A stretch of DNA of 64,000 nucleotides from assembly GCF_022045235.1 (NCBI RefSeq), contig NW_027266265.1, forward strand, positions 29,140,001 through 29,204,000. Reading direction: 5' to 3'. The position numbers and the translations under genes are program-made. This DNA comes from Haliotis cracherodii (taxonomy: Eukaryota). The notes under the pieces are model-generated. The model saw only the letters and a list, made by a program, of their open reading frames with translations, had not been told where the DNA came from and made no database searches. Position 1 is the first letter of the stretch. Each line of letters begins with the position of its first letter. Positions 2,670 through 63,500 of the stretch are shown here, piece by piece.

Positions 2670-5318
2670 ATGGTTCGGTCTCAAGTGTGTGTGGCACTTC
2701 TTGTCGTGGCCGTTTGTGCCGCAGCCCAAACTCCACAAAAGTATAGTTATAGCCAAGATACCAATGCAGAGGCCAGAACTGGCAAAACTACAAAACTGTA
2801 TAGGCCGGGGTTCAATTTACCAAGCCTACAACCTACACAGAGGATCCCGACAAACAACCTCCGATATGGACAGAATGGACTCATGAACCGTGGATATTAC
2901 CAAAGGAGACAGATGTATGATGGTCAGGACATTCCTAATCCTAATTATCGACGTAGTTATGGATATTCATCATATGGTCAATACAGAGGACAACCGCTTT
3001 CTTATGGCAGGTACAGTGTTCCAGACTATGACTACTATTATCCATATAATGCTGGCTATAGATACCCAGTTCAACGAGGAGCACCATCATACGGACAGAG
3101 TCGTCCCGCAGCATATGCCCCTTCACACCCATATGGCCAAGGTGCACCCTACCTTAGGGACACACGGTATGTATCCAATACCAATTATCCAACGTTGCCT
3201 CAGTACCCACAAGGTAGTGTTATGTACGGGGGAAGTAACAATGGAAAAAATAAAGGAAGGACAGGACAAAGAGGTGCAGGCAAGAGCAGTTCTGACGGTT
3301 ATGGACAAATGATGACCCCCGGAAGAGGCAATGAACCAAATAATTCTAATGGTATCAATTTCCAGCCAAATGGAAATTATTCGTTTGATAATGGTAGACA
3401 GCAGCCTCAGTCTCCCCAGTTCGGAAGATACCCGGACCCCAAAACGAAAGAAAATCAGCGACCGTCCAGTAATGTTGACTTGGCTGCTCTCTTTGGTAAC
3501 AGTGACGATAGGCGTGAACCAGGAGCACCTAGACAACCTTCAGTCATTGATATCAATGCTCTATTAAAGAACATTAGAAACAATAATCAGTTTGATGGTC
3601 GACCATTAGTACCAACATCGATGGACCTTGGGTCAGTGTACGCAAGTGGTGGCAGGGTACAAGGGTCCAACGCTGGTCCTTCTTCCTCATCTGACAATAA
3701 AATCCAGCAGAACCTTGGAGGTGTACCCAATGGACAAATCGTAGGTGCCCCTGTGATTTATCCTAATGGTGGCCAGCAACAAACCATTCTTCCACAACGG
3801 CCTAACGTACAGGGTTCACCTGAAAGGGTCCAGGGAAGACCAATTTATTATCCTCCTAGACAGAATGCTTTTCCTGGAAGAGGCAATCCACGAGAACCTA
3901 CGCGTGGAGGTAATGCTGTTCCTCAGAGGTACCCTCAGCGAAACGGTCAACCGGGAAACAATGAAGGGATACTATTGACGGAAGAACAACTCCAACAACT
4001 GTTTCAACGACAGTCAGAAAATATGAAAGGTTCCCCTGAAGGATCTAAAAATCAGAATCAAGTACCATACTATGGCCCTTCGTCAGGGCAACCGTCAGCA
4101 CAGCCACCAACACAAGGAAGACCAAATTTACCAGGGCCAGACCAACCTGGGAACAACGTGGGCAATCAAAGGTATCCTGAAGGGAATAACCAGCCCCAGG
4201 ATATCAACGGAGGTGTTATAACCTTAACGCCTGAGCAACTTCAAAATATATTTGGGCAGTCGAGAAATTCGCAAGGTTCTATAAATTCAATGCAGGACAC
4301 CGTACCATCTCGGCAACCTCCTGTCCAGCCCCCTAGAAGATCAAGTCAGCCAGGACCTAACAACCAACAGTATCCCCAGGGGGGTGGCCAAAGGTATCCT
4401 CAGGGGAGAGACCAACGTTTTCCCCAGGGCAGTGACCAACGCTATCCTCAGGGGAGTGGCCAACGTTTTCCTCAGGGAGGTGACCAAGCTGATCCTCAGG
4501 GGAGAGACCAACGCTATCCTCAAGGGAGTGATCAACGTTTTCCCCAGGGCAGTGACCAACGCTATCCTCAGGGGAGTGGCCAGCGTTTTCCCCAGGGAGG
4601 TGACCAAGGCTATCCTCAGGGCAGTGATCAACGCTATCCTCAGGGGAGAGACCAACGTTTTCCCCAGGGCAGTGACCAACGCTATCCTCAGGGGAGTGGC
4701 CAACGTTTTCCCCAGGGAGGTGACCAACGCTATCCTCAGGGCAGTGACCAACGCTATCCTCAGGGAAGTGGCCAACGTTTTCCCCAGGGAGGTGACCAAC
4801 GCTATCCTCAAGGGAGTGACCAACGTTTTCCCCAGGGCAGTGACCAACGCTATCCTCAGGGGAGTGGCCAGCCTTTTCCCCAGGGAGGTGACCAAGGTGA
4901 TCCTCAGGGGAGAGACCAACGCTATCCTCAAGGGAGTGATCAACGTTTTCCCCAGGGCAGTGACCAACGCTATCCTCAGGGGAGTGGCCAGCCTTTTCCC
5001 CAGGGAGGTGACCAACGTGATTCTCAGGGGAGAGACCAACGTTTTCCCCAGGGCAGCGACCAAAGCTATCCTCAAGGGAGTGACCAACGCTATCCTCAGG
5101 GGAGTGACCAAGGGTATGAAGGTATACCCTTGACTGCTGAGCAAATTGAGAAACTGTTTGGACAGTCTATTGGTCAAAATGTGCCAGAAAATCCAAGTCA
5201 AGGTGACAGAAATAGTGCATCTCAGTATGAAAATACTCCGGTGACACCTAGTGGGCAGCCTACCGACAACAAACCTGGTCCCCCGACCTCTTCTGATAGA
5301 ACCGTGAACCAGGGTTAA
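2670..5318 (+). CDS. Secreted low-complexity Gln/Gly/Pro/Arg/Tyr-rich tandem-repeat protein (882 aa, single exon); candidate extracellular structural, matrix or adhesive protein
   Basis: Uninterrupted 2.6-kb ORF. Hydrophobic signal peptide MVRSQVCVALLVVAVCAAA-Q. Tyr/Gly-rich N-terminal region and about 30 copies of an 8-aa unit [DG]QR[YF]PQG[SGR]. TATA-like AATATAAAG about 50 bp upstream; AATAAA at about 5546 and 5884. Confidence 0.9.
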   Translation: MVRSQVCVALLVVAVCAAAQTPQKYSYSQDTNAEARTGKTTKLYRPGFNLPSLQPTQRIPTNNLRYGQNGLMNRGYYQRRQMYDGQDIPNPNYRRSYGYSSYGQYRGQPLSYGRYSVPDYDYYYPYNAGYRYPVQRGAPSYGQSRPAAYAPSHPYGQGAPYLRDTRYVSNTNYPTLPQYPQGSVMYGGSNNGKNKGRTGQRGAGKSSSDGYGQMMTPGRGNEPNNSNGINFQPNGNYSFDNGRQQPQSPQFGRYPDPKTKENQRPSSNVDLAALFGNSDDRREPGAPRQPSVIDINALLKNIRNNNQFDGRPLVPTSMDLGSVYASGGRVQGSNAGPSSSSDNKIQQNLGGVPNGQIVGAPVIYPNGGQQQTILPQRPNVQGSPERVQGRPIYYPPRQNAFPGRGNPREPTRGGNAVPQRYPQRNGQPGNNEGILLTEEQLQQLFQRQSENMKGSPEGSKNQNQVPYYGPSSGQPSAQPPTQGRPNLPGPDQPGNNVGNQRYPEGNNQPQDINGGVITLTPEQLQNIFGQSRNSQGSINSMQDTVPSRQPPVQPPRRSSQPGPNNQQYPQGGGQRYPQGRDQRFPQGSDQRYPQGSGQRFPQGGDQADPQGRDQRYPQGSDQRFPQGSDQRYPQGSGQRFPQGGDQGYPQGSDQRYPQGRDQRFPQGSDQRYPQGSGQRFPQGGDQRYPQGSDQRYPQGSGQRFPQGGDQRYPQGSDQRFPQGSDQRYPQGSGQPFPQGGDQGDPQGRDQRYPQGSDQRFPQGSDQRYPQGSGQPFPQGGDQRDSQGRDQRFPQGSDQSYPQGSDQRYPQGSDQGYEGIPLTAEQIEKLFGQSIGQNVPENPSQGDRNSASQYENTPVTPSGQPTDNKPGPPTSSDRTVNQG
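4363..5117 (+). repeat. Coding 24-bp tandem repeat (about 30 units) with 120-bp higher-order periodicity
   Basis: Units such as gaccaacgctatcctcaggggagt and gaccaacgttttccccagggcagt recur in a 5-unit order. Confidence 0.95.
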
Positions 5319-12654: not shown

Positions 12655-15600
12655 ATGAACACATTTATCATTTTGACTATTATAATTTCTCTACCTGCAT
12701 TATCACTGCAACAAAATGGTAAGTAACATACATGTATTAAATTAGAGATTATGAGAAGATCATTTTAACTTTATAGCAGTTCAGAATTAATACTTTTATT
12801 TATCAGTACTTAGCGTTTTATAATTTGATTTTATTATGCCTCAAACATTTTGATGGAACACAATAATTTAATTGATCATATCGTGTGATATTATTATGTA
12901 AAAGGCTTGCACGCTGTGATTTCCTTTAACTGTAACGTAGGGATGGAAAGATGTACGCTGTCATCGTTTGATGTTTATTTTAACCAACATGGACATGTGT
13001 GTATTGAAAAGATGTGCGCTGTACACCAACAACAGCAAGAATCCCATATACTAACAAGACAAATTTCAATTGTTCCGTCATGCTTTAATGAATATTGCTT
13101 GGTTTTATCTCAACCTTAATCTAAAGTATGCCACATACATGGATGCCTTACATCAATGAGCAAATACTAGCAATGCTGAATTTACTAATTACATTAATTG
13201 CTTTTTTCAGCTCCTTATACTTTTTGTAACACACTGTGTAACCTGATCAAAAGATGCTCACCTACCGCATCTTACTGTAGCGGCGCCAATGTGATCAGAC
13301 TATCGAGTTTATGCCGTTGCCAAGGTAAATATGTCATTCTAATGCTTGCTAAAATATACTTATAAGAATGATTAGAGAAAGAATGAACTTATTAGATAAA
13401 CGTTCAATATGAATAGATCAAGTTTGAAGAATTAGGTAATTTATTGTCGTCTTTATATTTCTGTTTTAAGTATTCTTTATCAATAAGATAAAGAAAACAC
13501 CTTAACAGATGTATGAGTAATTCTACCAGAAGGACATAGAACGTAGGGTATCTATTTTTTTAAATAGGAATTGAAACCAGTAAATCTTGAGGTATGCTAA
13601 ATGCATTCCCCGTCTTACTGATATTTCTTTACACTCAGATCGAAAAGATAATTTTTGGGTCCTTAATTTGGCTGGTATATAAAACACTGCAGTGCCTCCT
13701 AAACCTCATCTTCGCAACATGAAATTGAACATGGACGAAATAAAACTGAAAAGTAAATTAAAGCACCATCATGATGATGATATCTGATGTTCGTGAAGGG
13801 TAAATTATGTTGGTCCTCCATTAAGGCCAAGCTGATTGAGGTCAGTGTACAGTTGATCCTGGACAAAGAGTTTCTATAATTCATGAATGACAACATCCGC
13901 AAAGCGTAATAAAAGCGACAAAACCCTTGTCATAGTCATAAGATATAATCTGCGAAAAGAAGAGTCCACGGTAAGATTCCGTCTTATCATAATCATGTGA
14001 AGAACATATATATTATTGTCATTATTACATCTTTAAATGGATTATTATTTGGGTGGTCAAGTGATCGAAAGTGAGACGATGTGCTGTGCAGGTGAAGACT
14101 TTGTATCTTAGATGTCATTATCAGACACAGATCGAACATCAGACTGGCCCAGATGGACGTACTTGGTGATCTAGTGATCAATAGCCATTCTTTTCTTTAC
14201 AGAAGGTACAGGGATTGGCAATCCTCCTACAAGAAGGCCTACAAGAAGGCCTACAAGAACAACTACTACCACTACTACTACGACGACAACAACAACTCGG
14301 GCGCCATTTGTCAATAACCGTGAGGCAACATGTCGTTTATTTGATACACAATCAATAAATATCTATTTAGCAATTATCTACGCAACCTTAAGAAAACAGA
14401 TACATAATCCTTTTGTGAAAGTTCGAAAGTTAATGCTTTGTCATACGATGAAACCTTGTTAACTCGAACCTCTGAAACCATTAACTCGGTATACATGGTT
14501 AACTTAATGATCCCAGTAGGATCTCCATAAATCGATAAGTTGTCTAATATGAAAACTAAGTTTGTTTCAAACCACGGATAACTTGATATTGTGCGATGTA
14601 GTCAGAATTTTCTGAAACCTTAATACTTCATATACATGTATACATCTATTTGTAGAATGCGGCATCAGTGGAATTGCAAATCCTCAGGTATTTGTGGATT
14701 CCTTGCCTCGCATAGTGGGTGGGTATGACGCCCCAGAGACCTACTTTCCGTGGCAAGTGATTATCAAACCTGGTAGTGCCCGTTGTGGCGGCACAATCAT
14801 CAGCACAGACACTGTCATCACGGCTGCACACTGTGTGAAGTTAGTCATTTTGTACATAATTTGTCTCATGAAATTGTTTAAAAATGAATGTGGTTAGAAA
14901 CTGGTCAGGGTTACATATGAGTTTACATTTTGTTGATATATAATTACACACAGAGATGTTTCAACTCTGATACCTGAACAACCCAAATAGCTCTCGTACT
15001 CTTATTGTGTTTCTATTTTCTGTTTTAGATTTATGGAAATACATTTAATTTTAAATTTAGGACATCGTAGGACTTTATCATCAACACGGATTATCATATA
15101 CGATAAGGGTTGTTGATTCGTCACTGGAAATGGACAATGTTCCTCCTACAATGCATCACATAGATACATACATAGATACACACATAGATACATGCATGCA
15201 TGCATCCATCCATGCATCCATCCACCCCCCACNNNNNNNNNNNNNNNNNNNNNNNNNNNNNNNNNNNNNNNNNNNNNNNNNNNNNNNNNNNNNNNNNNNN
15301 NNNNNNNNNNNNNNNNNNNNNNNNNNNNNNNNNNNNNNNNNNNNNNNNNNNNNNNNNNNNNNNNNNNGTATTCGGTACATAAAATATATTTATGTATTCA
15401 TTTCAGCAATTTCCGAAATAATCCTCGCTCGGTTCAAGTAGGCCATGGTTCTGTTGACAGCAACTTCGCACAATACATAACAGCTTCCCAAATAATCGTA
15501 CATCCTGGCTACAGTCAATTCTCAGGTAATTTGTATTTGTCTTGTCTGTCTAAGAAGCACCAATATTTCTATCTTTCATTTAATTCTGACATGTGTGTAA

Positions 15601-51123: not shown

Positions 51124-52260
51124 CACCCCCCCCCCCCCCCCCCTCCTCCCCCCTCATTGTGCGCAGCATTAAGTAACGGAATATAGGATTTTCTAACAAA
51201 CCTTTAGTCAGGCATATGTAAACTTTCACGCCGATATTTTATAACGCTTTACAGACATACATATAGTGGGTATCTTCCCCATTCACCTCTTATATAATGA
51301 TTTGCAGTTGTACATTTAACACTCAGAAAGCGCTTACAGGCAAACAGGTACAGTTTCAATTTCTTTCAATTCACGATTTATACCTAATTACAATCTACTT
51401 ACTGAGTATTGTGGACAGCTCCAACCTAATATTGACAAGTAATTGGACCATGCACGCTTTAGGGAATCAGAGATGTGTTTTCTCCAGTATGTGACTTATG
51501 GCACACGTATACTGAAGCCCCTAAATATTTTTTGAAATTGATATTACAGTCTGCAGCTTGATAATGATGCACCTCATATGTACACATAATTTAAACGCCA
51601 ATTGTAAATCTGTTGAATATGTGCCCTTTATCACATCAATTTATTCAGAATGTTGGTGAATATGTAGTGAATGGTGAGTACTTTGATTGTGATAAAGTGA
51701 TGTCTTCTCGTTGTTGAACTATTTGTTTTGTGGTTTGTGGTTTGTGATGGGAAATGGAAAGAAAACACTTGCAAAAAATGTTACGGTTGTAAATAACCTT
51801 TGAAGATTCTTAACTACGTTGCTTTTGCCTTAAAAACACAGGTATACATGTACGACAACATCATCTGTATTAGAATATGACAATTACATTCCCATTTTAT
51901 GTGTGTCGTCAAAAATATGCTTTCGTCCTCCAGAATCTTATTATGTCTAGATAAGTGGGTTTAAGGCGGGACGTCATTAACAGATGACTCATGATATAGT
52001 TGGTTTTAGATTAAATACGTCCTTTAAATCTTAGAGTTACTGCTCAATTATAGCTCAGGGAGGAAAACGTCTTAATATATATAGGTATGTATACATGCTT
52101 CTCTTTGATCTTAATTGCACTTTGATTAAAAACACAAACGATTAGCCTTTAAGACCTACCCTGTGCATGTTGACCCAAGTACAACATACAAAAACCACGG
52201 AGTGAGAATCAGACGGGATCATCCAGCGAAGCAATGTTGAGTTGCCAACTGTCTTGAATA

Positions 52261-55200
52261 ATGCGTATCCTTCTTGTCATCAGCCTATTGTTCTGCATAT
52301 GCCATTGTTTTCTTGCACAAGGAGTTGGAGGTAGGTGGATGTTATAATGCATTAATTTTCTTTTGATATGTAATGGCATGTAATAGAGCTACAGTATAAA
52401 ATATGCTCTCAGGTTTATACAATTTTTCAACGTGAAATCGTTTAGCTTTTGTTGTTCAAAATCAATATAAATATATTTTTTCTGCTTTCAAATGATATGA
52501 TTTTTGTGCTGTACGTTGAACAATGTATGAGTGCTACTTGCTGGATAGCAAAGCAGTTTCAAATGTGTTTCATTTCATGTTCATGTGATCGTCTTTGAAA
52601 AATAGTAATTTTATCGATCTTTAATCAAAACGTTGCGTCGGTCCTATAGAATTGCTAATTAAGTAAGGCTTGAACAATTCATCTGCTTCTTTAATGCTAT
52701 TTATTAATATATAAAGATTTGTAAGGAAATAAGTATTTGCTAATTTGCTAAGGAAATCATGTTTACCTCAACAATGAACGATCTGTTTATTTAGTTTTTA
52801 TTTCGTGAAGATTTATGCAAGATTCTGACCGGTCTCCTTCATGATGCGGATTCCCAGCAACTCTATGACCTACTTGACTGTGATAAGATGCGTAAGTTCA
52901 TGCATATCAGCCCAACATATGAAAGATAATATCCATATTTGCAAAAAACTGTGATAAGATGCGTAAGTTCATGCATATCAGCCCAACATATGAAAGATAA
53001 TATCCATATTTGCAAAAAAATAAAGGCGAATAGTTTATATCTGATTTTTAGGTCATGTTGTTATTTAACAGTGCAAAATATGTATTTAAAAAAATATTTA
53101 ACTTTTTTTTATAAATGCTTTTGAATGAACACGTATTTGGTTTGTATGAAAAGTACTTTTGTTTGTTTTAGCATTTCATAGACCACATGTAACAACAACA
53201 GAATAGGTACGTCCTTGTCCATTTCATTTTCATCATGCATTGCATTGGATCACATAATATATTAAAGCATACCTTTATTCCAGTATCTTCATGCGGTACA
53301 GTGCTGAACAGAAAGTGCCCACACCCATGGGTAGTTATTGTTCGTGATAAGAAAAGGAAGGCTGAAATGTGTGTTGGAACACTAATAGACGAGAGGCATA
53401 TCATCACTGCTGCCCATTGCTTCAGTCAAAGGTAGGAAAATGAAATACTATTCTTAAAGGTGGACAGGGGTTGGTTAATTGGCAGTCCTAGCAAATTTGA
53501 ATCTCGTCCCTCAGATAATAGTTTCTGGGCAGAACATGTGCACTTACAGTAGAGCGTAGTCGCCATTTAACATTTGTTTAAGTTATGTTTAGGATACGAG
53601 TTGGTTGTGTCCCATGTAATACCCAGCCATATGTCTATTATCAAGCATAATCATATCTAGATTTGTAAATAAAGTTGTCCGATTCATGAATTCATTTATG
53701 ATGAACTATGTTAAAGGATAGTACGTTTGTTTTGTCATCAACATGATTTAGTTATCACACACATCACTATCACAAATTCACTAAATCTGACAAAAATCAG
53801 TATACATTTTACGAATACTATAAATATAATTTTGGGATGGACAGATCGTGTTGCCTGCATATGAAAACAGAAAAAATCGAAAAAAAATATCTGATTGTCA
53901 AGTAGCCTTCGTGTTATAACCAATACATGTTGACTACTGAGCTGCACAAATGTTTTCAACAAGCCCCCCACCTCTAATGGTTTAACCCCTCTGAAGTTAA
54001 CACCATGACGCCATTTGTTTTTGTATCATATGCTTGACGCTTCACGATTGACCGACGCTGTTCACAAGATGGTCCTGATATTGCGAGACAGGCATATTTC
54101 ATCGAATATAGGAACATGTACTTGTAAGTTCTAAACTCGTGAAGATTTTCTCAAGAGTTCTAAATTTGTTACAATTTTATATAGTGTCAAATTTAATATC
54201 ATGGAAACCCAATAGCCATTTTTTGTCAAAGAAATAACAACGACAAACACTACATTCCAAATTATCTTTACAAGGTATTTCCTCGCTGACGATGTGCATG
54301 TGGGTATGGGTTCACAAAAGGCTGGAGAGCTCACCTACATAGACTTGGAGTCCTTTACGCTTCATCCTAAATATAGAAACACTGGTTTGGCAAGTACGTT
54401 CTTACAAAACCATTTCCATAATCAATTAAATCTCTGCTGAAAACATATGGAATATAAAGAAAATCAATTAAGTCATCATTACTAAAAGGGTTGTTGTGCC
54501 TGTATCATTTTCAGGACACGATGTCGCAGTTCTCACCTTGAAGAAGAAGGTTGGGTTTACGCCCTGTATTCAGCCAATATGTATACCCGGAACAGCAACC
54601 AATCCTGAAAAGGGAGAACTGGTCACAATCGTAGGATTTGGGCGTAAGGGCGTTTTATTTTTTCCCTATATCAAACCATTTTGTCTATTTTTCAATTCTA
54701 AACAGTTGGGGGGAAAAAGCACACATACCAATGTTTGATGGTGGCTAGAAATGAGACAAACAACAAATGGTTATGCGATTGGGATGTATTTGATACGGAT
54801 ATCACATTTTGCCCCTGAAATTTACAGTGTCTCGGTTTCTGTTTTCTAGCCTATTAACTTTTGAATAACATTTCTAATTTTTGGGTCGAATCCAATTTTT
54901 GAAGCGTTTACCTTGATTTGCCCGGTAACTTGTGTAATATTGGTATGTAGTGTGACTTTTCATAGAGTTTAATTGGTGAAAAACCCCACAGTATATTGTA
55001 GATGTCAATGTGATGTCCTTTTTTGTTGTCTTACAACTTTTAATATGCCAGTTTCCTTTGATGTTTTAAGGTTTCTGGAACAAACAAAGGGCAAGATTGC
55101 AGGCAACTGTGCTACCAGTAATAAGCCGTGAGGAGTGTGTGAGCATCTACCCGGAAGTATCGGCACTACAACATTCGATCTGCGCTGGATTGTGGTCTAG

Positions 55201-55882
55201 CATATCTTCTTCGTCAGTTTGTCATGTAAGGAATTTATATTCCATGATTAATCGCACAGTCTAAGGCGCTGCAATTCGCTGTGCAGAGTTCGGTACGCCA
55301 GAAACTTATGATTGTGGATTCGAATCCCGGTTCGCCTTGATTATGTTTTTAGTTTTGTCAGCACAATATCCGAGTTTGTGGGTTTCGCCTTAGTGGAAAC
55401 CTGCATCACTTCGGACTTTCTTCCCACATTAATCTGACACGCCGTGATATAACTGGAATACTGTTCTGAACGGCGTTAAACCCATCTTACTCATTCATAA
55501 ATGTCAAGTTCACATGTACTTAATTTATTATTTTGGTAATTCTTATTGAACAAATTATCAGTTTGCTTAATAATATCATTATCGATAAAACAGAACTTAC
55601 AATTTACACCATTAATTTACTTTTCAAAGGGGAATTGAATTTAATTGAATTTTCAGTTGATAGAAATTATTAAATTTAAAATACAACTTGCACTATAAAT
55701 GATCTCACAATTTTCAGGGAAATTCAGGAGCCCCAATGATGCTTCAACGAGAATATAAGTGGTTTCTGTACGCTGTCAGCACATCACACAGGAGTTGCGA
55801 AGAAGCTGTTTCTGTGTACATAGACATTCCTCACTATGCCACCTGGATCAACAGTGTTAAAGAACATGAACAGCTCTTTTGA
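52261..55882 (+). CDS. SP5: atypical secreted S1A protease or protease homolog (triad intact, no IVGG, GNSGA instead of GDSGG; about 288 aa, 7 exons)
   Basis: Exons 52261-52330 (MRILLVISLLFCICHCFLAQG), 52811-52891 (2-Cys module), 53284-53431 (SCG..HPW..TAAHC), 54275-54393 (119 nt as in paralogs), 54515-54643 (HDVAVL..GFG), 55071-55225, 55718-55882 (GNSGAP..WINSVKEHEQLF*). Open frame of 867 nt. AATAAA at 55906. Confidence 0.85.
52877..53018 (+). repeat. 71-bp tandem duplication spanning the SP5 exon-2 donor site
   Basis: ACTGTGATAAGATGCGTAAGTTCATGCATATC...TTTGCAAAAA twice. Confidence 0.92.
55253..55497 (+). mobile_element. SINE family C
   Basis: CAGTCTAAGGCGCTGC..GATTCGAATCCCGGTTCGCC..GGCGTTAAACCC. 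Confidence 0.8.
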
Positions 55883-56182
55883 ATGTTTGCACCTATCAAT
55901 GTTAAAATAAATGCGTGACAAAATGAACATGCACCGTTTCATGGCAATTTGATTTCCATTTTGTTTAATTTTATTTTTTGAGAGTTCATGTACACACACG
56001 TGCGTATAACTCGGTAGCTAGAAATAAACATAAGGTAATGTTTCAGTCTTGGTATTTTGCTTTGAATATATTTTGAGATCTAAACAAATGGTATATCCTT
56101 TGGTGGCGACGATTATCATGATCATGAGATGCAACATTTCATATTTAAAAAGAAATTTCACTGGCAGATTCTCATTTAAATA

Positions 56183-60577: not shown

Positions 60578-63500
60578 ATGTGGACGAAATCTGCACTTTT
60601 ACTACTTGTACTATGTGCCTTATTCCTGACAACCGACAGCGCCAGTAAGTGTTTGTCATTTTTTTGAATTATGAATAATATATATGCTCGCGCTACAATG
60701 ATTAGTTTTTTGGAATGGCAAAGTATAGCTGCCTTGTAAAAAAAGCTTTGTTTCATGTTTCCATTTATAATCACAATACTTTGTCATCATATCAAGGCGA
60801 GGTATCACGTATTGTTCATTTGATTTTTGTTAATGAGCAAGAATTAGTAACTTCATTGGGTATAGTGTTCCACAGGTTAATCGTATCCGGAAGAAATGAT
60901 TTAGCATAGGTCTGGGTTCTACATTGTATTATGTGTATGTTAGATCTATTTCTAAGGTTATAATTGATATTACCAGAGACTGGACTTGGAATGAGATCGT
61001 TGAGATATACAGGTTAAATACTGTTTTTCATTTCGTAAAATGTAGTCAATTTGAAGCGGTGTCGTGGTTCTTTGAAGGACTGAAAGTTTGTTTCGTTATA
61101 AAATTTAACATGACTGGTACCCCGAACCGCCCCACAAATAGTTCTCAATGCGTCCAAATGTAAATTATCATATATACATGTGTATATTCCCCTGTATGCA
61201 TGATGCATGCGATTGTAAATCATGGAATGATACTATGTTCAGTTCATTGAGATATATATCTCCATTACATATGCATGGATTTTAAAAATTGCAAATAATG
61301 TTATGAATTCTGTCGTATTGTTTGGCAACATTAGAAAAGCTTTCACTGCTCAACATTGCTTTTGTGAGACACTTATGTAAAGTGAATGATCGCTTGCACG
61401 TTATAGATATGGAGGTAACAATGTTCACTCAAGTCTTGCACTGTGTGGTTTCATGTCACTGTAATGTTCCGTCATATTACAGACCTATGTGGCTTCTGTG
61501 ATGTTTTAAAGCAGTGCGTAAGCTTCCCCGCCTGCAAACAGTACTGGGACATATGCAAGTGTGAAGGTATTTAAGGCTTTAAATTTCATATTACGCAAAT
61601 ACAAGGTAGCTTCACATAGCATGTTGTATTCATAAATAAAGCTGCTTCATGTTCAAAGCCTACATTGACATGTTCGCATGAATCATTTCTTGACCCATAT
61701 CTTTTTTGTTTAACTTCATTTGCAATAGTAACAATGACTATAAAATATTAATAAATGAGGTAAATGTCAAAAATATGTTTCACTACGACACTTCGGATAT
61801 ATGCATATTTAAGGATGTCTCGAAAATATGGAGTGTATAATGAAGTAACTGTTTGAACTTTTCCAAGCTATACCCACGGACATCCAATGTGGCGTTGCTG
61901 AATCTCCTCCCATACCTAGGATATCCACCTACATCGTTGGTGGACAGGACGTTGGCGAGTGCGAGTTGCCATGGACCGTAGCGCTGTTCACCAAGGGTTC
62001 CTTGCGTTGTGGAGGCGCCATCATCGACGACAGGCACATCATCAGTGCAGCTCACTGCCTCATGTTAGTATAGCTTCTTTGGCTTTTATTTTCTCGAATG
62101 AGTGGGTGAATGAGTGATTAAATATGCTTTCAGGGGAGAAGTATGACGTCGGTGGATACCTTAACTGGACGTCACAACTGTGTCCATTTGAGTAATCGAC
62201 CCAACAACGCCTTAACCACCAGGCTACATTTGTATGCCAAATATGTAAAGAATGTTATTTTCAGTTACATTTGGACCAACAAATACCATTTAGACTATGA
62301 GATAGTCTGATATGACAGCTTGATATTTAAACAGACTGTAACACGCTTGGTGAATGATGTGATTCAACGCCACGTATAAAAGTATCTTATTTATATACAT
62401 GTAACAGATGTACAAACCATTTAGCAAATCGCTGATACTTGTTGGTATGATTTATGAAGAAATGTGAATGTGCTTCGCGCACAACTTCATATCACATTCA
62501 AGTGTTGGTATCCAAGAATGGAATTATATATGATAGATATCAATTATATAGTGTACAGAGAAAACATATACATGTTTTATTTTCACATAGGGGAATAAGG
62601 AATGCCAAAGATGTAATTGTGGGGCTCGGATCCTCAGACAGACGCCGAACGCGAAATGCAACAGTATCAGCCTTCAGCATGCATCCAGAGCATTGGTCAG
62701 GTGTGTGAGAAATATTCTCCCATGTGCATGTATCAATATTTTATTCCACTTGTTGAGTTGACTAAAATGTTTACATTTCTGTAAACTGAATACCTCCCTG
62801 TTACTGAATACCTCCCGTTTCAAGTCGAATAGGATAAAGTACATATGTAAAAGTATATCTTCTGAAAATAGACTTAGCCAATCACAATTCTTAGTGTTGT
62901 AAAAGCCCTCTGAATGTCACCAGTGAGTTATCAACCATCAAGCATGGCTTCATTATAAAAAACAAATATCCATCTATACCTTTATGTTAGAATAAGAAGC
63001 CGTCTCTTTGAAAATCTTCATGTGAACAATCAATATCATGGTTTTTTTCAGATGTCAACGATATTGTAATTTTAAGACTAAAAGAACCAATCAAGTTTAG
63101 CAAATGCATACGTCCGATTTGCCTTCCACCTCAAGACCATCAGTACAAACCCATGCAGAAATGCATTGTTGCTGGGTGGGGACTTACATCAGGTGAGTGT
63201 CATACCAAGCGAGAATTTTCCGTTTATGTAAAGCAATATACTTCCAGATCCAACTTCAGACGTCTACAAGTATAAATTGCTTAGATACTTTAGAGCGTGT
63301 ACAAAGTTATTCAAAGTTCACGGAACACTCATTCCTTGTTAATAATTGTGAAAGATTTGTCAAGGATAAAGGTCTGTATAAAAATCCAAACGACAAACAT
63401 CAAGTCTTTGAATGGCATTTAGAACATACTGCCCACTTAGGAATTGACTACAGACAGCTTGTTTTCATTTACCGTTCATAAGACATACAATCATTTTCAC

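What the first reader, a model, noticed from the sequence alone, without database searches (positions are those of the whole stretch)
52261..55882. SP5 keeps the catalytic triad but has co-lost the Ile16 N-terminus and Asp194
Seen: the sequence runs SCGTVLNRKCPHPW, deleting the whole R-IVGG segment. TAAHC (His57), HDVAVL (Asp102) and Ser195 remain, but the motif is CH-GNSGAP (Asp194Asn). GWG is GFG, position 189 is Ser, and the 211-220 segment is AVSTSHRSC. The frame is intact over 7 exons with paralog-like exon sizes. Established: S1A activation requires the Ile16-Asp194 salt bridge, and most non-catalytic homologs lose triad residues instead. Inference: correlated loss of both partners suggests a permanently zymogen-like cofactor, or an enzyme activated allosterically without cleavage.
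Basis: partly seen in the sequence, partly recalled or inferred. Interest (0 to 1): 0.75.

Follow-up and report, generated by a model that had tools for sequence, protein, structure and literature searches.

The report
Abalone protease lacking its activation switch
This abalone gene makes a secreted trypsin-family protein that keeps its three catalytic residues but has lost both halves of the molecular switch that normally turns such enzymes on, a rare state described so far mainly for the vertebrate protein PRSS23.

Summary
The gene at 52261-55882 (+) has seven exons. Spliced contigs in two public runs prove it, and it equals a 288-aa RefSeq protein of Haliotis cracherodii (P0015). It keeps His57 (TAAHC), Asp102 (HDVAVL) and Ser195, but reads C-H-G-N-S-G-A-P, so Asp194 is Asn.

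All six neighbouring paralogs have CG, then 25-28 residues including [R/Y]-[I/V]VGG, then PW, in one exon behind a phase-1 intron. This gene has the same intron and CG but only 9 residues before PW. A 16-19-codon in-frame deletion therefore removed the cleavage site and Ile16-Gly19.

Both traits, the triad and all 12 cysteines recur in the H. rufescens and H. asinina orthologs (68% identity). A stop-free frame at that divergence arose in only 13 of 2000 neutral simulations. The H. rubra model is frameshifted at a homopolymer.

It is the only S1A-type G-N-S-G-[GA]-P exon found in the genome. Function is untested. My best reading is an uncleavable, zymogen-like binding protein, as shown for PRSS23 (PMC13194640). 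An HtrA-like cleavage-independent enzyme is a serious rival.

The parts
52261..52330 (+). Exon 1: start codon and hydrophobic signal-like peptide MRILLVISLLFCICHCFLAQGVG; ends in phase 1
   Evidence: joint 52330|52811 in the spliced contigs of X2 and X3; identical to P0015 residues 1-23. Signal-peptide function is inferred from hydrophobicity, not tested.
52811..52891 (+). Exon 2: 27-residue acidic, helix-prone N-terminal extension with two Cys (D-LCKILTGLLHDADSQQLYDLLDCDKM), ending in Lys49-Met50
   Evidence: joints; conserved 18 of 27 residues versus H. asinina; predicted helices 18-30, 36-44 and 47-51 at pLDDT 69-77; no Pfam family above threshold; no similar exon found in the window's paralogs.
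53284..53431 (+). Exon 3: the shortened CG...PW segment through His57 (TAAHC)
   Evidence: Pfam Trypsin E 1.7e-07 for this exon alone.
53289..53330 (+). SCGTVLNRKCPHPW: the place of the 16-19-codon in-frame deletion that removed the activation cleavage site and Ile16-Gly19. Cys54 corresponds to the propeptide Cys that pairs with Cys122; Cys62 corresponds to 'Cys25', shared with SP6 and SP7.
   Evidence: CG-to-PW spacer of 9 aa here against 25-28 aa in 6 of 6 paralogs, all behind a phase-1 intron. The same 9-aa spacer occurs in P0012, P0013 and P0003. VIA alignments start at model residue 60 = chain residue 23 for heavy-chain-only thrombins, and at 52-53 = light-chain residue 1A/1B for single-chain entries.
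53415..53417 (+). His57 codon (in TAAHC)
54275..54393 (+). Exon 4
   Evidence: joints
54515..54643 (+). Exon 5: Asp102 (HDVAVL, Asp at 54520-54522), extra Cys five residues before Cys122 (TPCIQPICIP), and GFG in place of GWG (54634-54642)
   Evidence: The extra Cys is shared with SP6 (SKCIRPICLP) but not with SP2-4.
55071..55225 (+). Exon 6: short basic autolysis loop (R-FWNKQRARLQ), Cys168, Cys182, Ser-rich 184-190 loop, Ser189, Cys191-His192
55718..55882 (+). Exon 7: Gly193-Asn194-Ser195-Gly-Ala-Pro (Asn 55721-55723, Ser 55724-55726), AVSTSHRSC (Ser214, Thr215, Ser216, Cys220), Ser226, stop codon
   Evidence: There are no letter differences in the Asn194 codon in X2 or X3: all differences of their exon-7 pieces are listed and lie elsewhere.
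52877..53019 (+). Perfect 71-bp x 2.0 tandem duplication across the exon 2/intron 2 border, giving a second copy of the donor site. The transcripts seen use the first copy.
   Evidence: 100% matches; joint 52891|53284. Using the second donor would run into a stop (ORF block).
55224..55600 (.). Very high-copy dispersed repeat inside intron 6
   Evidence: summed contig depth of 1e4 to 7e5 in all four runs, with many loose ends; no Rfam match at E<=0.01.

Best explanation
This is a functional, secreted, single-chain member of a tandem cluster of S1A (chymotrypsin-fold) protease genes in abalone, and it can no longer be switched on in the classical way.

Shown: an old in-frame deletion of 16-19 codons removed the scissile bond and residues 16 to about 22. 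No new Ile16 N-terminus can therefore be made. The buried partner Asp194 has become the uncharged Asn. The gene is transcribed, correctly spliced, and kept open in abalone species that differ at one residue in three.

Inferred: without the Ile16-Asp194 clamp, the four activation-domain segments are not locked into the active geometry. All four are remodelled here: the N-terminus is deleted, the autolysis loop is 3 residues shorter and basic, the 184-193 loop is Ser-rich, and the 215-226 stretch reads T/I215, S216, S226 with a shorter 220 loop. The protein therefore stays zymogen-like, with little or no peptidase activity.

Most likely it acts by binding, as a pseudoprotease, decoy or cofactor. 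The binding surface would be the unusually well conserved basic 37-loop (RDKKRK) and autolysis loop (RFWNKQRAR) that flank the cleft. The acidic exon-2 helices may serve as an intramolecular partner. The retained triad may give residual or partner-induced activity.
For: Transcript and splicing: six GT..AG joints in one contig each of X2 and X3. There is no second genomic copy that could be a retrocopy.

Deletion: spacer of 9 aa against 25-28 aa in 6 of 6 paralogs behind the same phase-1 intron. The Pfam Trypsin match begins at profile position 11 of 220.

Conservation: Asn194, the triad, the 9-aa spacer and all 12 mature Cys are kept in 3 of 3 full-length orthologs (P0015, P0012, P0003). X2 and X3 show no change in the Asn194 codon or in the SCGT...PW residues. 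Only 13 of 2000 neutral simulations stayed stop-free at 32% protein divergence. There is a single in-frame 1-aa indel in 281 aligned residues.

Basic loops: VRDKKR[KN]A[ED]MC and GFGRFWNK[QR]RARLQ are nearly invariant.

Structure model: chymotrypsin fold, mean pLDDT 81, lowest in the autolysis loop (block 181-190: 63) and the 184-190 loop (block 221-230: 67). Model residues 53-59 are not superposed on residues 16-22 of active thrombins.

Precedents: PRSS23 keeps the triad, has Gln for Ile16 and Ala for Asp194, and showed no activity-probe labelling or pNA hydrolysis (PMC13194640, passages). Thrombin D194A and I16T lose activity about a thousand-fold or more (PMC6889508, passages and Table 2).

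Further erosion: the H. asinina ortholog also replaces the oxyanion-hole Gly193 by Asp (CQDNSGVP).
Against: No activity, binding or structural experiment exists. The triad and Ser214 are intact in every ortholog. Asn at the 194-equivalent position is the norm in active HtrA proteases (motif GNSGGPL, PMC8509474). Asn194 is therefore compatible with catalysis when the fold is ordered by other means.

Ser189/Ser216/Ser226 resemble an elastase-type pocket rather than a destroyed one. Non-Gly at 193 does not by itself abolish activity (mesotrypsin Arg193, recalled, not checked here).

Conservation of three triad residues at 68% identity is not statistically informative (0.68 cubed is about 0.3). 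dN/dS of about 0.40 rests on 12 changes and is not significantly below 1 (p=0.11). The basic-loop binding idea is inference only. AlphaFold coordinates could not be inspected.
Confidence: 0.5

Rival explanations
1. Cleavage-independent active protease. Replacing the buried charge of Asp194 by Asn removes the need for a counter-ion. The single chain could then adopt an active or ligand-inducible conformation without processing, as HtrA-type chymotrypsin-fold proteases do. Ser189/Ser216/Ser226 would give a preference for small P1 residues.
For: Triad, Ser214, Gly196, Pro198 and the three core disulfides are conserved in 3 of 3 full-length orthologs. GNSGGPL with a catalytic Ser is invariant in HtrA proteases (PMC8509474, one passage). 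Thrombin D194A keeps an intact oxyanion hole and is not equivalent to the zymogen (PMC6889508, passages). The two losses are matched, which is what a compensated change would look like. Recalled only: engineered trypsinogen gains activity with K15A plus D194N. That paper is not in the library (one search found only PMC6889508, which cites D194N/I16 studies).
Against: PRSS23, the only tested natural triad-keeping and switch-less S1 protein, was inactive (PMC13194640). The H. asinina ortholog has Asp at 193. Trp215 and Gly216, which hold the substrate backbone, are replaced. The activation loops have the lowest model confidence. The protein has none of the HtrA features (TNAHV motif, PDZ domain) that mediate HtrA allostery.
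Confidence: 0.3
2. Relocated activation site. The protein is cleaved after Lys49 (CDK|MLSS; CDK|ILSP in H. asinina). The new Met/Ile50 N-terminus, three residues further from Pro28 than normal, inserts into the Ile16 cleft and hydrogen-bonds Asn194.
For: K-[MI]-L-S is kept in 4 of 4 orthologs. H. asinina has the classical Lys-Ile. HMMER aligned DKMLSS with the DK|ILNG activation site of pro-phenoloxidase activating enzyme 2OLG (domain score 17 bits, i-E 0.02).
Against: Homology says otherwise. The phase-1 intron, CG and 'Cys25' anchors place the ancestral site inside the deleted stretch, and exon 2 has no counterpart in the paralogs. The alignment to 2OLG is weak. The whole N-terminal region is conserved, so the motif is not specially marked. 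The model puts residues 52-59 where thrombin's light chain lies, not in the cleft. Asn194 cannot form the salt bridge.
Confidence: 0.08
3. A gene on its way to decay: transcribed, but with no selected function.
For: The H. rubra model P0013 leaves the frame after ...NPEKG and ends at 200 aa. Protein identity of 68% between abalones is low. 7 of 12 changes against X2 are non-synonymous, giving a ratio of about 0.40 that is not significantly below 1. There was no coverage of the exons in run X1.
Against: The open frame, splice sites and 12 Cys are kept in three species. Only 13 of 2000 neutral simulations stayed stop-free, before counting indels. Spliced transcripts without gaps occur in two runs. 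The H. rubra shift lies at an A4G3 homopolymer (window 54606-54614 region). That is a typical long-read assembly error site; this is an inference and was not checked.
Confidence: 0.07
4. Mis-modelled gene: an IVGG-bearing exon was overlooked.
For: None found. My own first exon guesses were wrong for exon 2 and included a false 'exon' near 53170-53206.
Against: The spliced contigs join 52891 directly to 53284. SCGT...PW is contiguous genomic sequence. No [RK][IV][VIL][GN]G motif occurs in any frame between 52261 and 55882. RefSeq's independent model is identical.
Confidence: 0.02

Closest known systems
PRSS23 (and PRSS35), vertebrate secreted S1 'pseudoproteases' (PMC13194640, J Biol Chem 2026; passages read, supplementary figures not seen)
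   Same: Secreted chymotrypsin-fold protein. The Ser-His-Asp triad is conserved. Both partners of the Ile16-Asp194 switch are lost, and His40 is also absent. The losses are conserved across orthologs.
   Different: PRSS23 has Ala, not Asn, at 194. It has a long prodomain that is cleaved off to leave a Gln N-terminus, whereas here the cleavage site itself is deleted. This gene is a lineage-restricted member of a tandem cluster of ordinary abalone proteases and shares their introns and cysteines, so the state most likely arose independently. Direct sequence comparison with PRSS23 was not done. Inactivity is shown for PRSS23 but untested here.
HtrA/DegP proteases (S1C), motif GNSGGPL (PMC8509474, one passage)
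   Same: Asn directly before the catalytic Ser; no N-terminal insertion; activity does not depend on zymogen cleavage.
   Different: This protein has the S1A signature TAAHC (not TNAHV), S1A disulfides and no PDZ domain. It is not a family member. The resemblance is at one motif, and perhaps in regulatory logic.
The canonical neighbours in the same cluster, especially SP6 (window about 61900 to L006:3517) and SP7
   Same: Same phase-1 intron before CG, same 'Cys25' and (SP6) the same extra Cys five residues before Cys122, and the same DxRHI[IL][ST]AAHC context.
   Different: SP6 and SP7 keep [Y/R]-IVGG, and SP6 keeps GDSGGP. Identity to this gene is only 31-47% per exon. This gene also lacks the Cys136-Cys201 pair.
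Arthropod clip-domain serine protease homologs (e.g. the hit P0016 from Orchesella, named PPAF2-like by its source)
   Same: No IVGG between CG and PW; non-canonical residues around position 195.
   Different: Those lose Ser195 (GDGGGG in P0016), carry clip domains and are cleaved elsewhere. This gene keeps Ser195 and has no clip domain, despite RefSeq's automatic name 'CLIP domain-containing serine protease B9-like' for P0012.
Engineered and natural single-chain-active S1A forms (thrombin D194A/I16T in PMC6889508; single-chain tPA Lys156-Asp194 and C2a Glu194-Arg as summarised in PMC13194640)
   Same: They show what loss of the Ile16-Asp194 contact does: a large activity loss that is not identical to the zymogen state.
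   Different: According to PMC13194640, the natural exceptions all retain an acidic residue at 194. This gene does not.

Membership tests
S1A chymotrypsin-fold peptidases (Pfam PF00089) | Sequence and fold match to the trypsin domain | tested here: met
   PF00089 E 1.7e-37, residues 63-278 = profile 11-220 of 220. Enteropeptidase 1EKB E 2.8e-24. Model Z 29, rmsd 2.2-2.4 A over 223-233 residues to thrombins.
S1A chymotrypsin-fold peptidases (Pfam PF00089) | Catalytic triad His57, Asp102, Ser195 in TAAHC / D[IV]A[LV] / xSG contexts | tested here: met
   kept in 3 of 3 full-length orthologs.
S1A chymotrypsin-fold peptidases (Pfam PF00089) | Core disulfides 42-58, 168-182, 191-220 | tested here: met
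   All six Cys align with those of 1EKB and are invariant in the orthologs. The pairing itself was not tested.
Canonical zymogen-activated S1A protease | Arg/Lys15-Ile/Val16 scissile bond and the I/V-V-G-G N-terminus | tested here: not met
   No such motif in any frame of 52261-55882; spacer of 9 aa against 25-28 aa; transcript has no extra exon.
Canonical zymogen-activated S1A protease | Asp194 preceding Ser195 | tested here: not met
   AAT = Asn at 55721-55723; Asn in P0012 and P0003 as well.
PRSS23/PRSS35-type switch-less pseudoprotease | Triad retained while Ile16 and the acidic residue 194 are both lost | tested here: met
   The definition is taken from PMC13194640.
PRSS23/PRSS35-type switch-less pseudoprotease | Orthology or close sequence relationship to PRSS23 | not tested
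   No PRSS23 sequence was fetched. Indirect evidence is against it: the nearest relatives are the tandem neighbours with shared intron phase and cysteines, and database searches returned only Haliotis orthologs above E 1e-12.
PRSS23/PRSS35-type switch-less pseudoprotease | No serine-hydrolase activity | not testable with these tools
   Needs recombinant protein and activity probes.
HtrA (S1C) | GNSGGPL and TNAHV motifs plus PDZ domain(s) | tested here: not met
   GNSGAPM only; TAAHC instead of TNAHV; no PDZ hit in Pfam.
Arthropod-type clip-domain serine protease homolog | Clip domain and loss of Ser195 | tested here: not met
   Ser195 is present. No clip-domain family was among the Pfam hits at E<=0.01. 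Exon 2 has only two Cys.

The most novel reading that the evidence does not exclude
A natural S1A enzyme that has abandoned zymogen cleavage altogether. The paired change (deletion of the Ile16 segment plus Asp194 to Asn, the residue HtrA proteases use) yields a single-chain protease that is still catalytic. It would be switched by a ligand or by its own acidic N-terminal helices docking on the conserved basic loops. That would be an evolutionary conversion from proteolytic to allosteric control within the chymotrypsin subfamily.
Probability: 0.25. Interest if true: 0.7.

Novelty: new member of a known kind. Interest (0 to 1): 0.4.

Why it matters
The Ile16-Asp194 switch is the textbook control of the largest protease family. 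Natural proteins that keep the catalytic triad but drop both halves of the switch have only just been described, for PRSS23 in 2026, and their function is unclear.

This gene is an independent invertebrate case reached by a different route: a deletion plus Asn. It comes with intact canonical sister genes beside it, which gives a clean comparative pair (this gene against SP6) for two questions. Does neutralising residue 194 compensate for the missing N-terminus? And what are retained triads in such proteins for?

For abalone biology it is one lineage-restricted, fast-evolving secreted protein of unknown role. As it stands it is a modest finding: a well-documented oddity, not a new mechanism.

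Tried and rejected
1. My first hand-drawn exon model had eight exons. It used a wrong acceptor for exon 2 and a false exon near 53170-53206. The frame did not close, and one search gave the true junctions.

2. I considered that S53-C54-G55-T56 is a substituted IVGG rather than a deletion, because length, Pfam and MAFFT alignments put it there. I rejected this as homology because the intron phase and the CG and 'Cys25' anchors in six paralogs show a 16-19-residue gap.

3. I considered that SP6 lacks its last exons, because a motif scan missed them. tblastn found them at L006:2799-2888 and 3374-3517.

4. Wider relatives. The exon-7 peptide against 1.84 billion representatives gave 11 hits, and only P0003 is an ortholog. 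Three word-index searches gave only P0012, P0003 and P0013; the next best hit is at 24% identity. No ortholog outside Haliotis was found. This does not prove absence, because the index needs shared 5-mers and few vetigastropod proteomes may be held.

Codon-based selection tests, synteny in other abalones and the H. rubra frameshift all stayed unchecked.

6. Foldseek's top list contains several collapsed or E*-form thrombin mutants (I16T, D194A, W215A/E217A). The scores are tied with ordinary thrombins, so I draw nothing from it.

7. Rfam on the intron-6 repeat gave no match.

8. Literature. Searches found no paper on this abalone gene. The only paper found on natural triad-keeping and switch-less S1 proteins is PMC13194640. 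Its supplementary figures S5-S7 (ortholog alignments, phylogeny) were not seen and might list invertebrate relatives.

Disulfide pairing, occupancy of the Ile16 cleft and oxyanion-hole geometry could therefore not be measured.


Full report
WHAT IS THERE. The window is G000:C2:29140001-29204000 of a 1.18-Gb genome. A protein identical to the gene's product is RefSeq XP_071086286.1 of Haliotis cracherodii, and its contig length (59,495,813) equals that of the window's contig. The window is therefore black abalone.

The window holds a cluster of S1A protease genes:
- SP1 on the + strand near 14.7-17.9 kb, with an assembly gap at 15233-15367 that I left alone.
- SP2, SP3 and SP4 on the - strand (31.9-27.4, 41.1-37.9 and 47.8-43.9 kb).
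- The finding ('SP5') at 52261-55882 on the + strand.
- SP6 from about 61.9 kb, running past the window's end, and SP7 about 6 kb further on.

GENE MODEL AND TRANSCRIPT. I searched the spliced model exon by exon and did not join exons for any search. Laying four public runs on 52200-55950 showed one contig in X2 (976 nt) and one in X3 (918 nt) that skip six introns, all GT..AG. The exons are 52261-52330, 52811-52891, 53284-53431, 54275-54393, 54515-54643, 55071-55225 and 55718-55882. That is 867 nt, or 288 codons plus stop.

These contigs have no gaps against the exons, and 12 (X2) and 11 (X3) letter differences. X11 holds unspliced, genomic-type contigs. X1 holds nothing on the exons.

The run kinds are only guessed as RNA by the tool. 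The intron-less contigs are the evidence. A retrocopy is unlikely, because the exon-3 and exon-7 peptides find no second copy in the genome.

My own first exon guesses were wrong for exon 2. No IVGG-type motif exists in any frame of the gene.

THE TWO LOSSES. Exon 7 starts G-N-S-G-A-P after exon 6 ends ...S-S-V-C-H. This gives Ser189, Cys191, His192, Gly193, Asn194 and Ser195 by alignment to enteropeptidase 1EKB.

For the N-terminus I compared the exon that carries His57 in all paralogs. Each starts behind a phase-1 intron, 2-6 residues before a Cys-Gly. It then has 13-16 residues, [R/Y]-[I/V]VGG, eight residues, and Pro28-Trp29. The CG-to-PW spacers are 28, 27, 27, 27, 25 and 28 residues in SP1, SP2, SP3, SP4, SP6 and SP7.

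SP5 has the same phase-1 intron, L-S-S-C-G, and then only nine residues (TVLNRKCPH) before PW. SP6 and SP7 have a Cys three residues before Pro28 (ECELPW, ECQFPW), as SP5 does (KCPHPW). SP6 and SP5 also share an extra Cys five residues before Cys122, which SP2-4 lack.

SP5 therefore belongs to the SP6/SP7 subgroup. It carries an in-frame deletion of 16-19 codons between CG and 'Cys25' that took out the scissile bond and Ile16-Gly19. SP6 itself is canonical ([13 protein letters not shown]...).

By length alone, S53-C54-G55-T56 falls on positions 16-19. The anchors show that this is coincidence of length, not homology.

In the AlphaFold model (mean pLDDT 81.4, pTM 0.78, 23-row alignment), structural alignments to thrombin heavy chains begin at model residue 60 = residue 23. 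Alignments to single-chain entries begin at residues 52-53 = light-chain residue 1A/1B. This fits Cys54 being the propeptide Cys that pairs with Cys122, and it does not fit an inserted N-terminus. Only ranges, not coordinates, could be seen.

OTHER DEPARTURES:
- GFG for Gly140-Trp141-Gly142.
- An autolysis loop about three residues shorter and basic (RFWNKQRAR).
- Val43 for Gly43, and no His40.
- A Ser-rich 184-190 loop.
- Thr215 and Ser216 for Trp-Gly; Ser226; a 220 loop two residues shorter than enteropeptidase's.
- No Cys136-Cys201 pair.

All four segments of the classical activation domain are thus altered. Exon 2 adds a 27-residue acidic stretch with two Cys, predicted helical. It has no Pfam family and no counterpart in the neighbours.

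IS IT MAINTAINED? The exon-7 peptide, searched against 1.84 billion representatives, found one ortholog, P0003 of H. asinina. Searches with that record, with P0012, and with the ortholog alignment found P0012 (H. rufescens, 98% identical to P0015) and P0013 (H. rubra). The next hit was a 24%-identical springtail protein.

P0015, P0012 and P0003 align over 281 residues with one 1-aa indel. They share the 9-residue spacer, TAAHC, the Asp102 motif, N-S-G, Ser214 and all 12 mature cysteines. Identity to H. asinina is 68%, and it is even along the exons at 62-76%.

The H. asinina protein reads C-Q-D-N-S-G-V-P, so its Gly193 is Asp.

Starting from the window's codons, random substitution up to 32% protein divergence left the frame stop-free in 13 of 2000 runs, indels not counted. 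The frame has therefore been under selection for most of that time.

AGAINST THIS. P0013 leaves the frame after ...NPEKG and ends at 200 aa. The site is an A4G3 run, so a long-read assembly error is plausible, but I could not check it.

A short-range estimate is inconclusive. X2's 12 differences split 7 non-synonymous to 5 synonymous. Seven of the twelve are listed. The other five are inferred from their agreement with P0012: 3 in exon 2 matching D24E and G31N, and 2 silent in exon 4. This gives dN/dS of about 0.40, with p = 0.11 against neutrality.

HOW UNUSUAL? In the whole genome, the DNA pattern for G-N-S(TCN)-G-[GA]-P has 28 matches, against 18 for the reversed control. Translating all 28 gave the following:
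- 1 is an S1A exon, and it is this gene.
- 1 looks HtrA-like (GNSGGPLVNL).
- 13 belong to a dispersed repeated ORF.
- The remaining 13 look unrelated.

The AGY-Ser version has 19 matches against 33 for its control, and 0 of the 19 are protease-like. The canonical G-D-S-G-[GA]-P pattern has 67 matches against 25 for its control. Variants with other residues at 196-198 were not counted.

WHAT IT MOST LIKELY DOES. Two things are shown. The protein cannot produce an Ile16 N-terminus, and it has no acidic residue at 194. The Huber-Bode activation is therefore impossible.

Established knowledge on the switch:
- Thrombin I16T and D194A lose roughly three orders of magnitude of activity, although D194A keeps its oxyanion hole (PMC6889508, passages and Table 2).
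- PRSS23 keeps the triad, has Gln/Ala at 16/194, and gave no activity-probe labelling or pNA hydrolysis. Its cellular effects survive S-to-A mutation (PMC13194640, abstract and passages).
- That paper also states that the known natural exceptions to N-terminal insertion (single-chain tPA, C2a) still use an acidic 194.

My best reading (0.5) is therefore a zymogen-like, uncleavable binding protein. The near-invariance of two normally variable loops that flank the cleft (RDKKR[KN] and RFWNK[QR]RAR) points to an acidic partner. This step is inference.

The main rival (0.3) is a cleavage-independent enzyme. Asn before the catalytic Ser is the invariant state of active HtrA proteases (GNSGGPL; PMC8509474). 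The loss of the charge matches the loss of its counter-ion. The pocket residues resemble an elastase type.

A relocated cleavage site after Lys49 (K-M/I-L-S, weakly aligned by HMMER to the K|ILNG site of 2OLG) gets 0.08. Decay gets 0.07. A missed exon gets 0.02.

COMPARISON AND NOVELTY. The protein is an S1A family member by fold, Pfam match, triad and disulfides. It fails the two features that define a zymogen-activated S1A protease. It works like, but is not shown to be related to, PRSS23/PRSS35. It is not an HtrA and not a clip-domain homolog.

RefSeq's automatic names do not capture any of this. They are 'venom peptide isomerase heavy chain-like' for P0015, 'CLIP domain-containing serine protease B9-like' for P0012, 'trypsin-like' for P0003, and 'plasma kallikrein-like' for the 239-aa isoform P0014, which starts at Met50 without a signal peptide.

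My searches found no paper on this gene. I rate it a new, independently evolved member of a recently recognised kind, with interest 0.4. It would rise if the protein proved catalytic without cleavage.

Noticed in passing
window 52877-53019: Perfect 71-bp tandem duplication (2.0 copies, 100% identity) spanning the last 15 nt of exon 2, its GT donor and 56 nt of intron. A second, unused donor copy lies 71 nt downstream, and using it would hit a stop. It is very recent, possibly polymorphic or an assembly artefact.
   Followed up: partly
window 55224-55600 (intron 6): Extremely high-copy dispersed repeat: summed contig depth of 1e4 to 7e5 in all four runs, with many loose ends. No Rfam family at E<=0.01.
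   Followed up: partly
window about 61900-62070 and L006:2799-3517 (SP6): The canonical sister gene has Tyr, not Arg/Lys, before IVGG (PRISTY|IVGG). This would call for a chymotrypsin-like rather than trypsin-like activator.
   Followed up: no
L009, L012, L015-L018, L022-L027, L032 (13 loci on 9 contigs of G000): A dispersed repeated ORF reading ...TAFVG[FL]GNSGGP[IV][EG]FWGHCWDV... turned up in the motif scan. It is presumably part of a mobile element. Its GNSGGP is not in an S1A context.
   Followed up: no
L033 (G000:C80:17575241-17575257, - strand): Exon reading F-GNSGGPLVNL, the HtrA-type motif. It is probably the abalone HtrA gene.
   Followed up: no
P0013 (H. rubra ortholog), corresponding to window about 54606-54643: The H. 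rubra gene model shifts frame after NPEKG at an A4G3 homopolymer and ends at 200 aa. This is either lineage-specific loss or an assembly error.
   Followed up: partly
P0014 (isoform X2 of the same gene): RefSeq lists a 239-aa isoform that starts at Met50, the last codon of exon 2. It lacks the signal peptide and the exon-2 helices.
   Followed up: no
window 54635 (run X11 only): In the genomic contigs of X11 the first Gly of GFG is Glu (G>A), among many intronic differences. No X11 contig was laid on exon 7 at 90% likeness.
   Followed up: no
window 15233-15367: An assembly gap of 135 N lies inside SP1, between its His57 exon and the next exon. It was left untouched.
   Followed up: no
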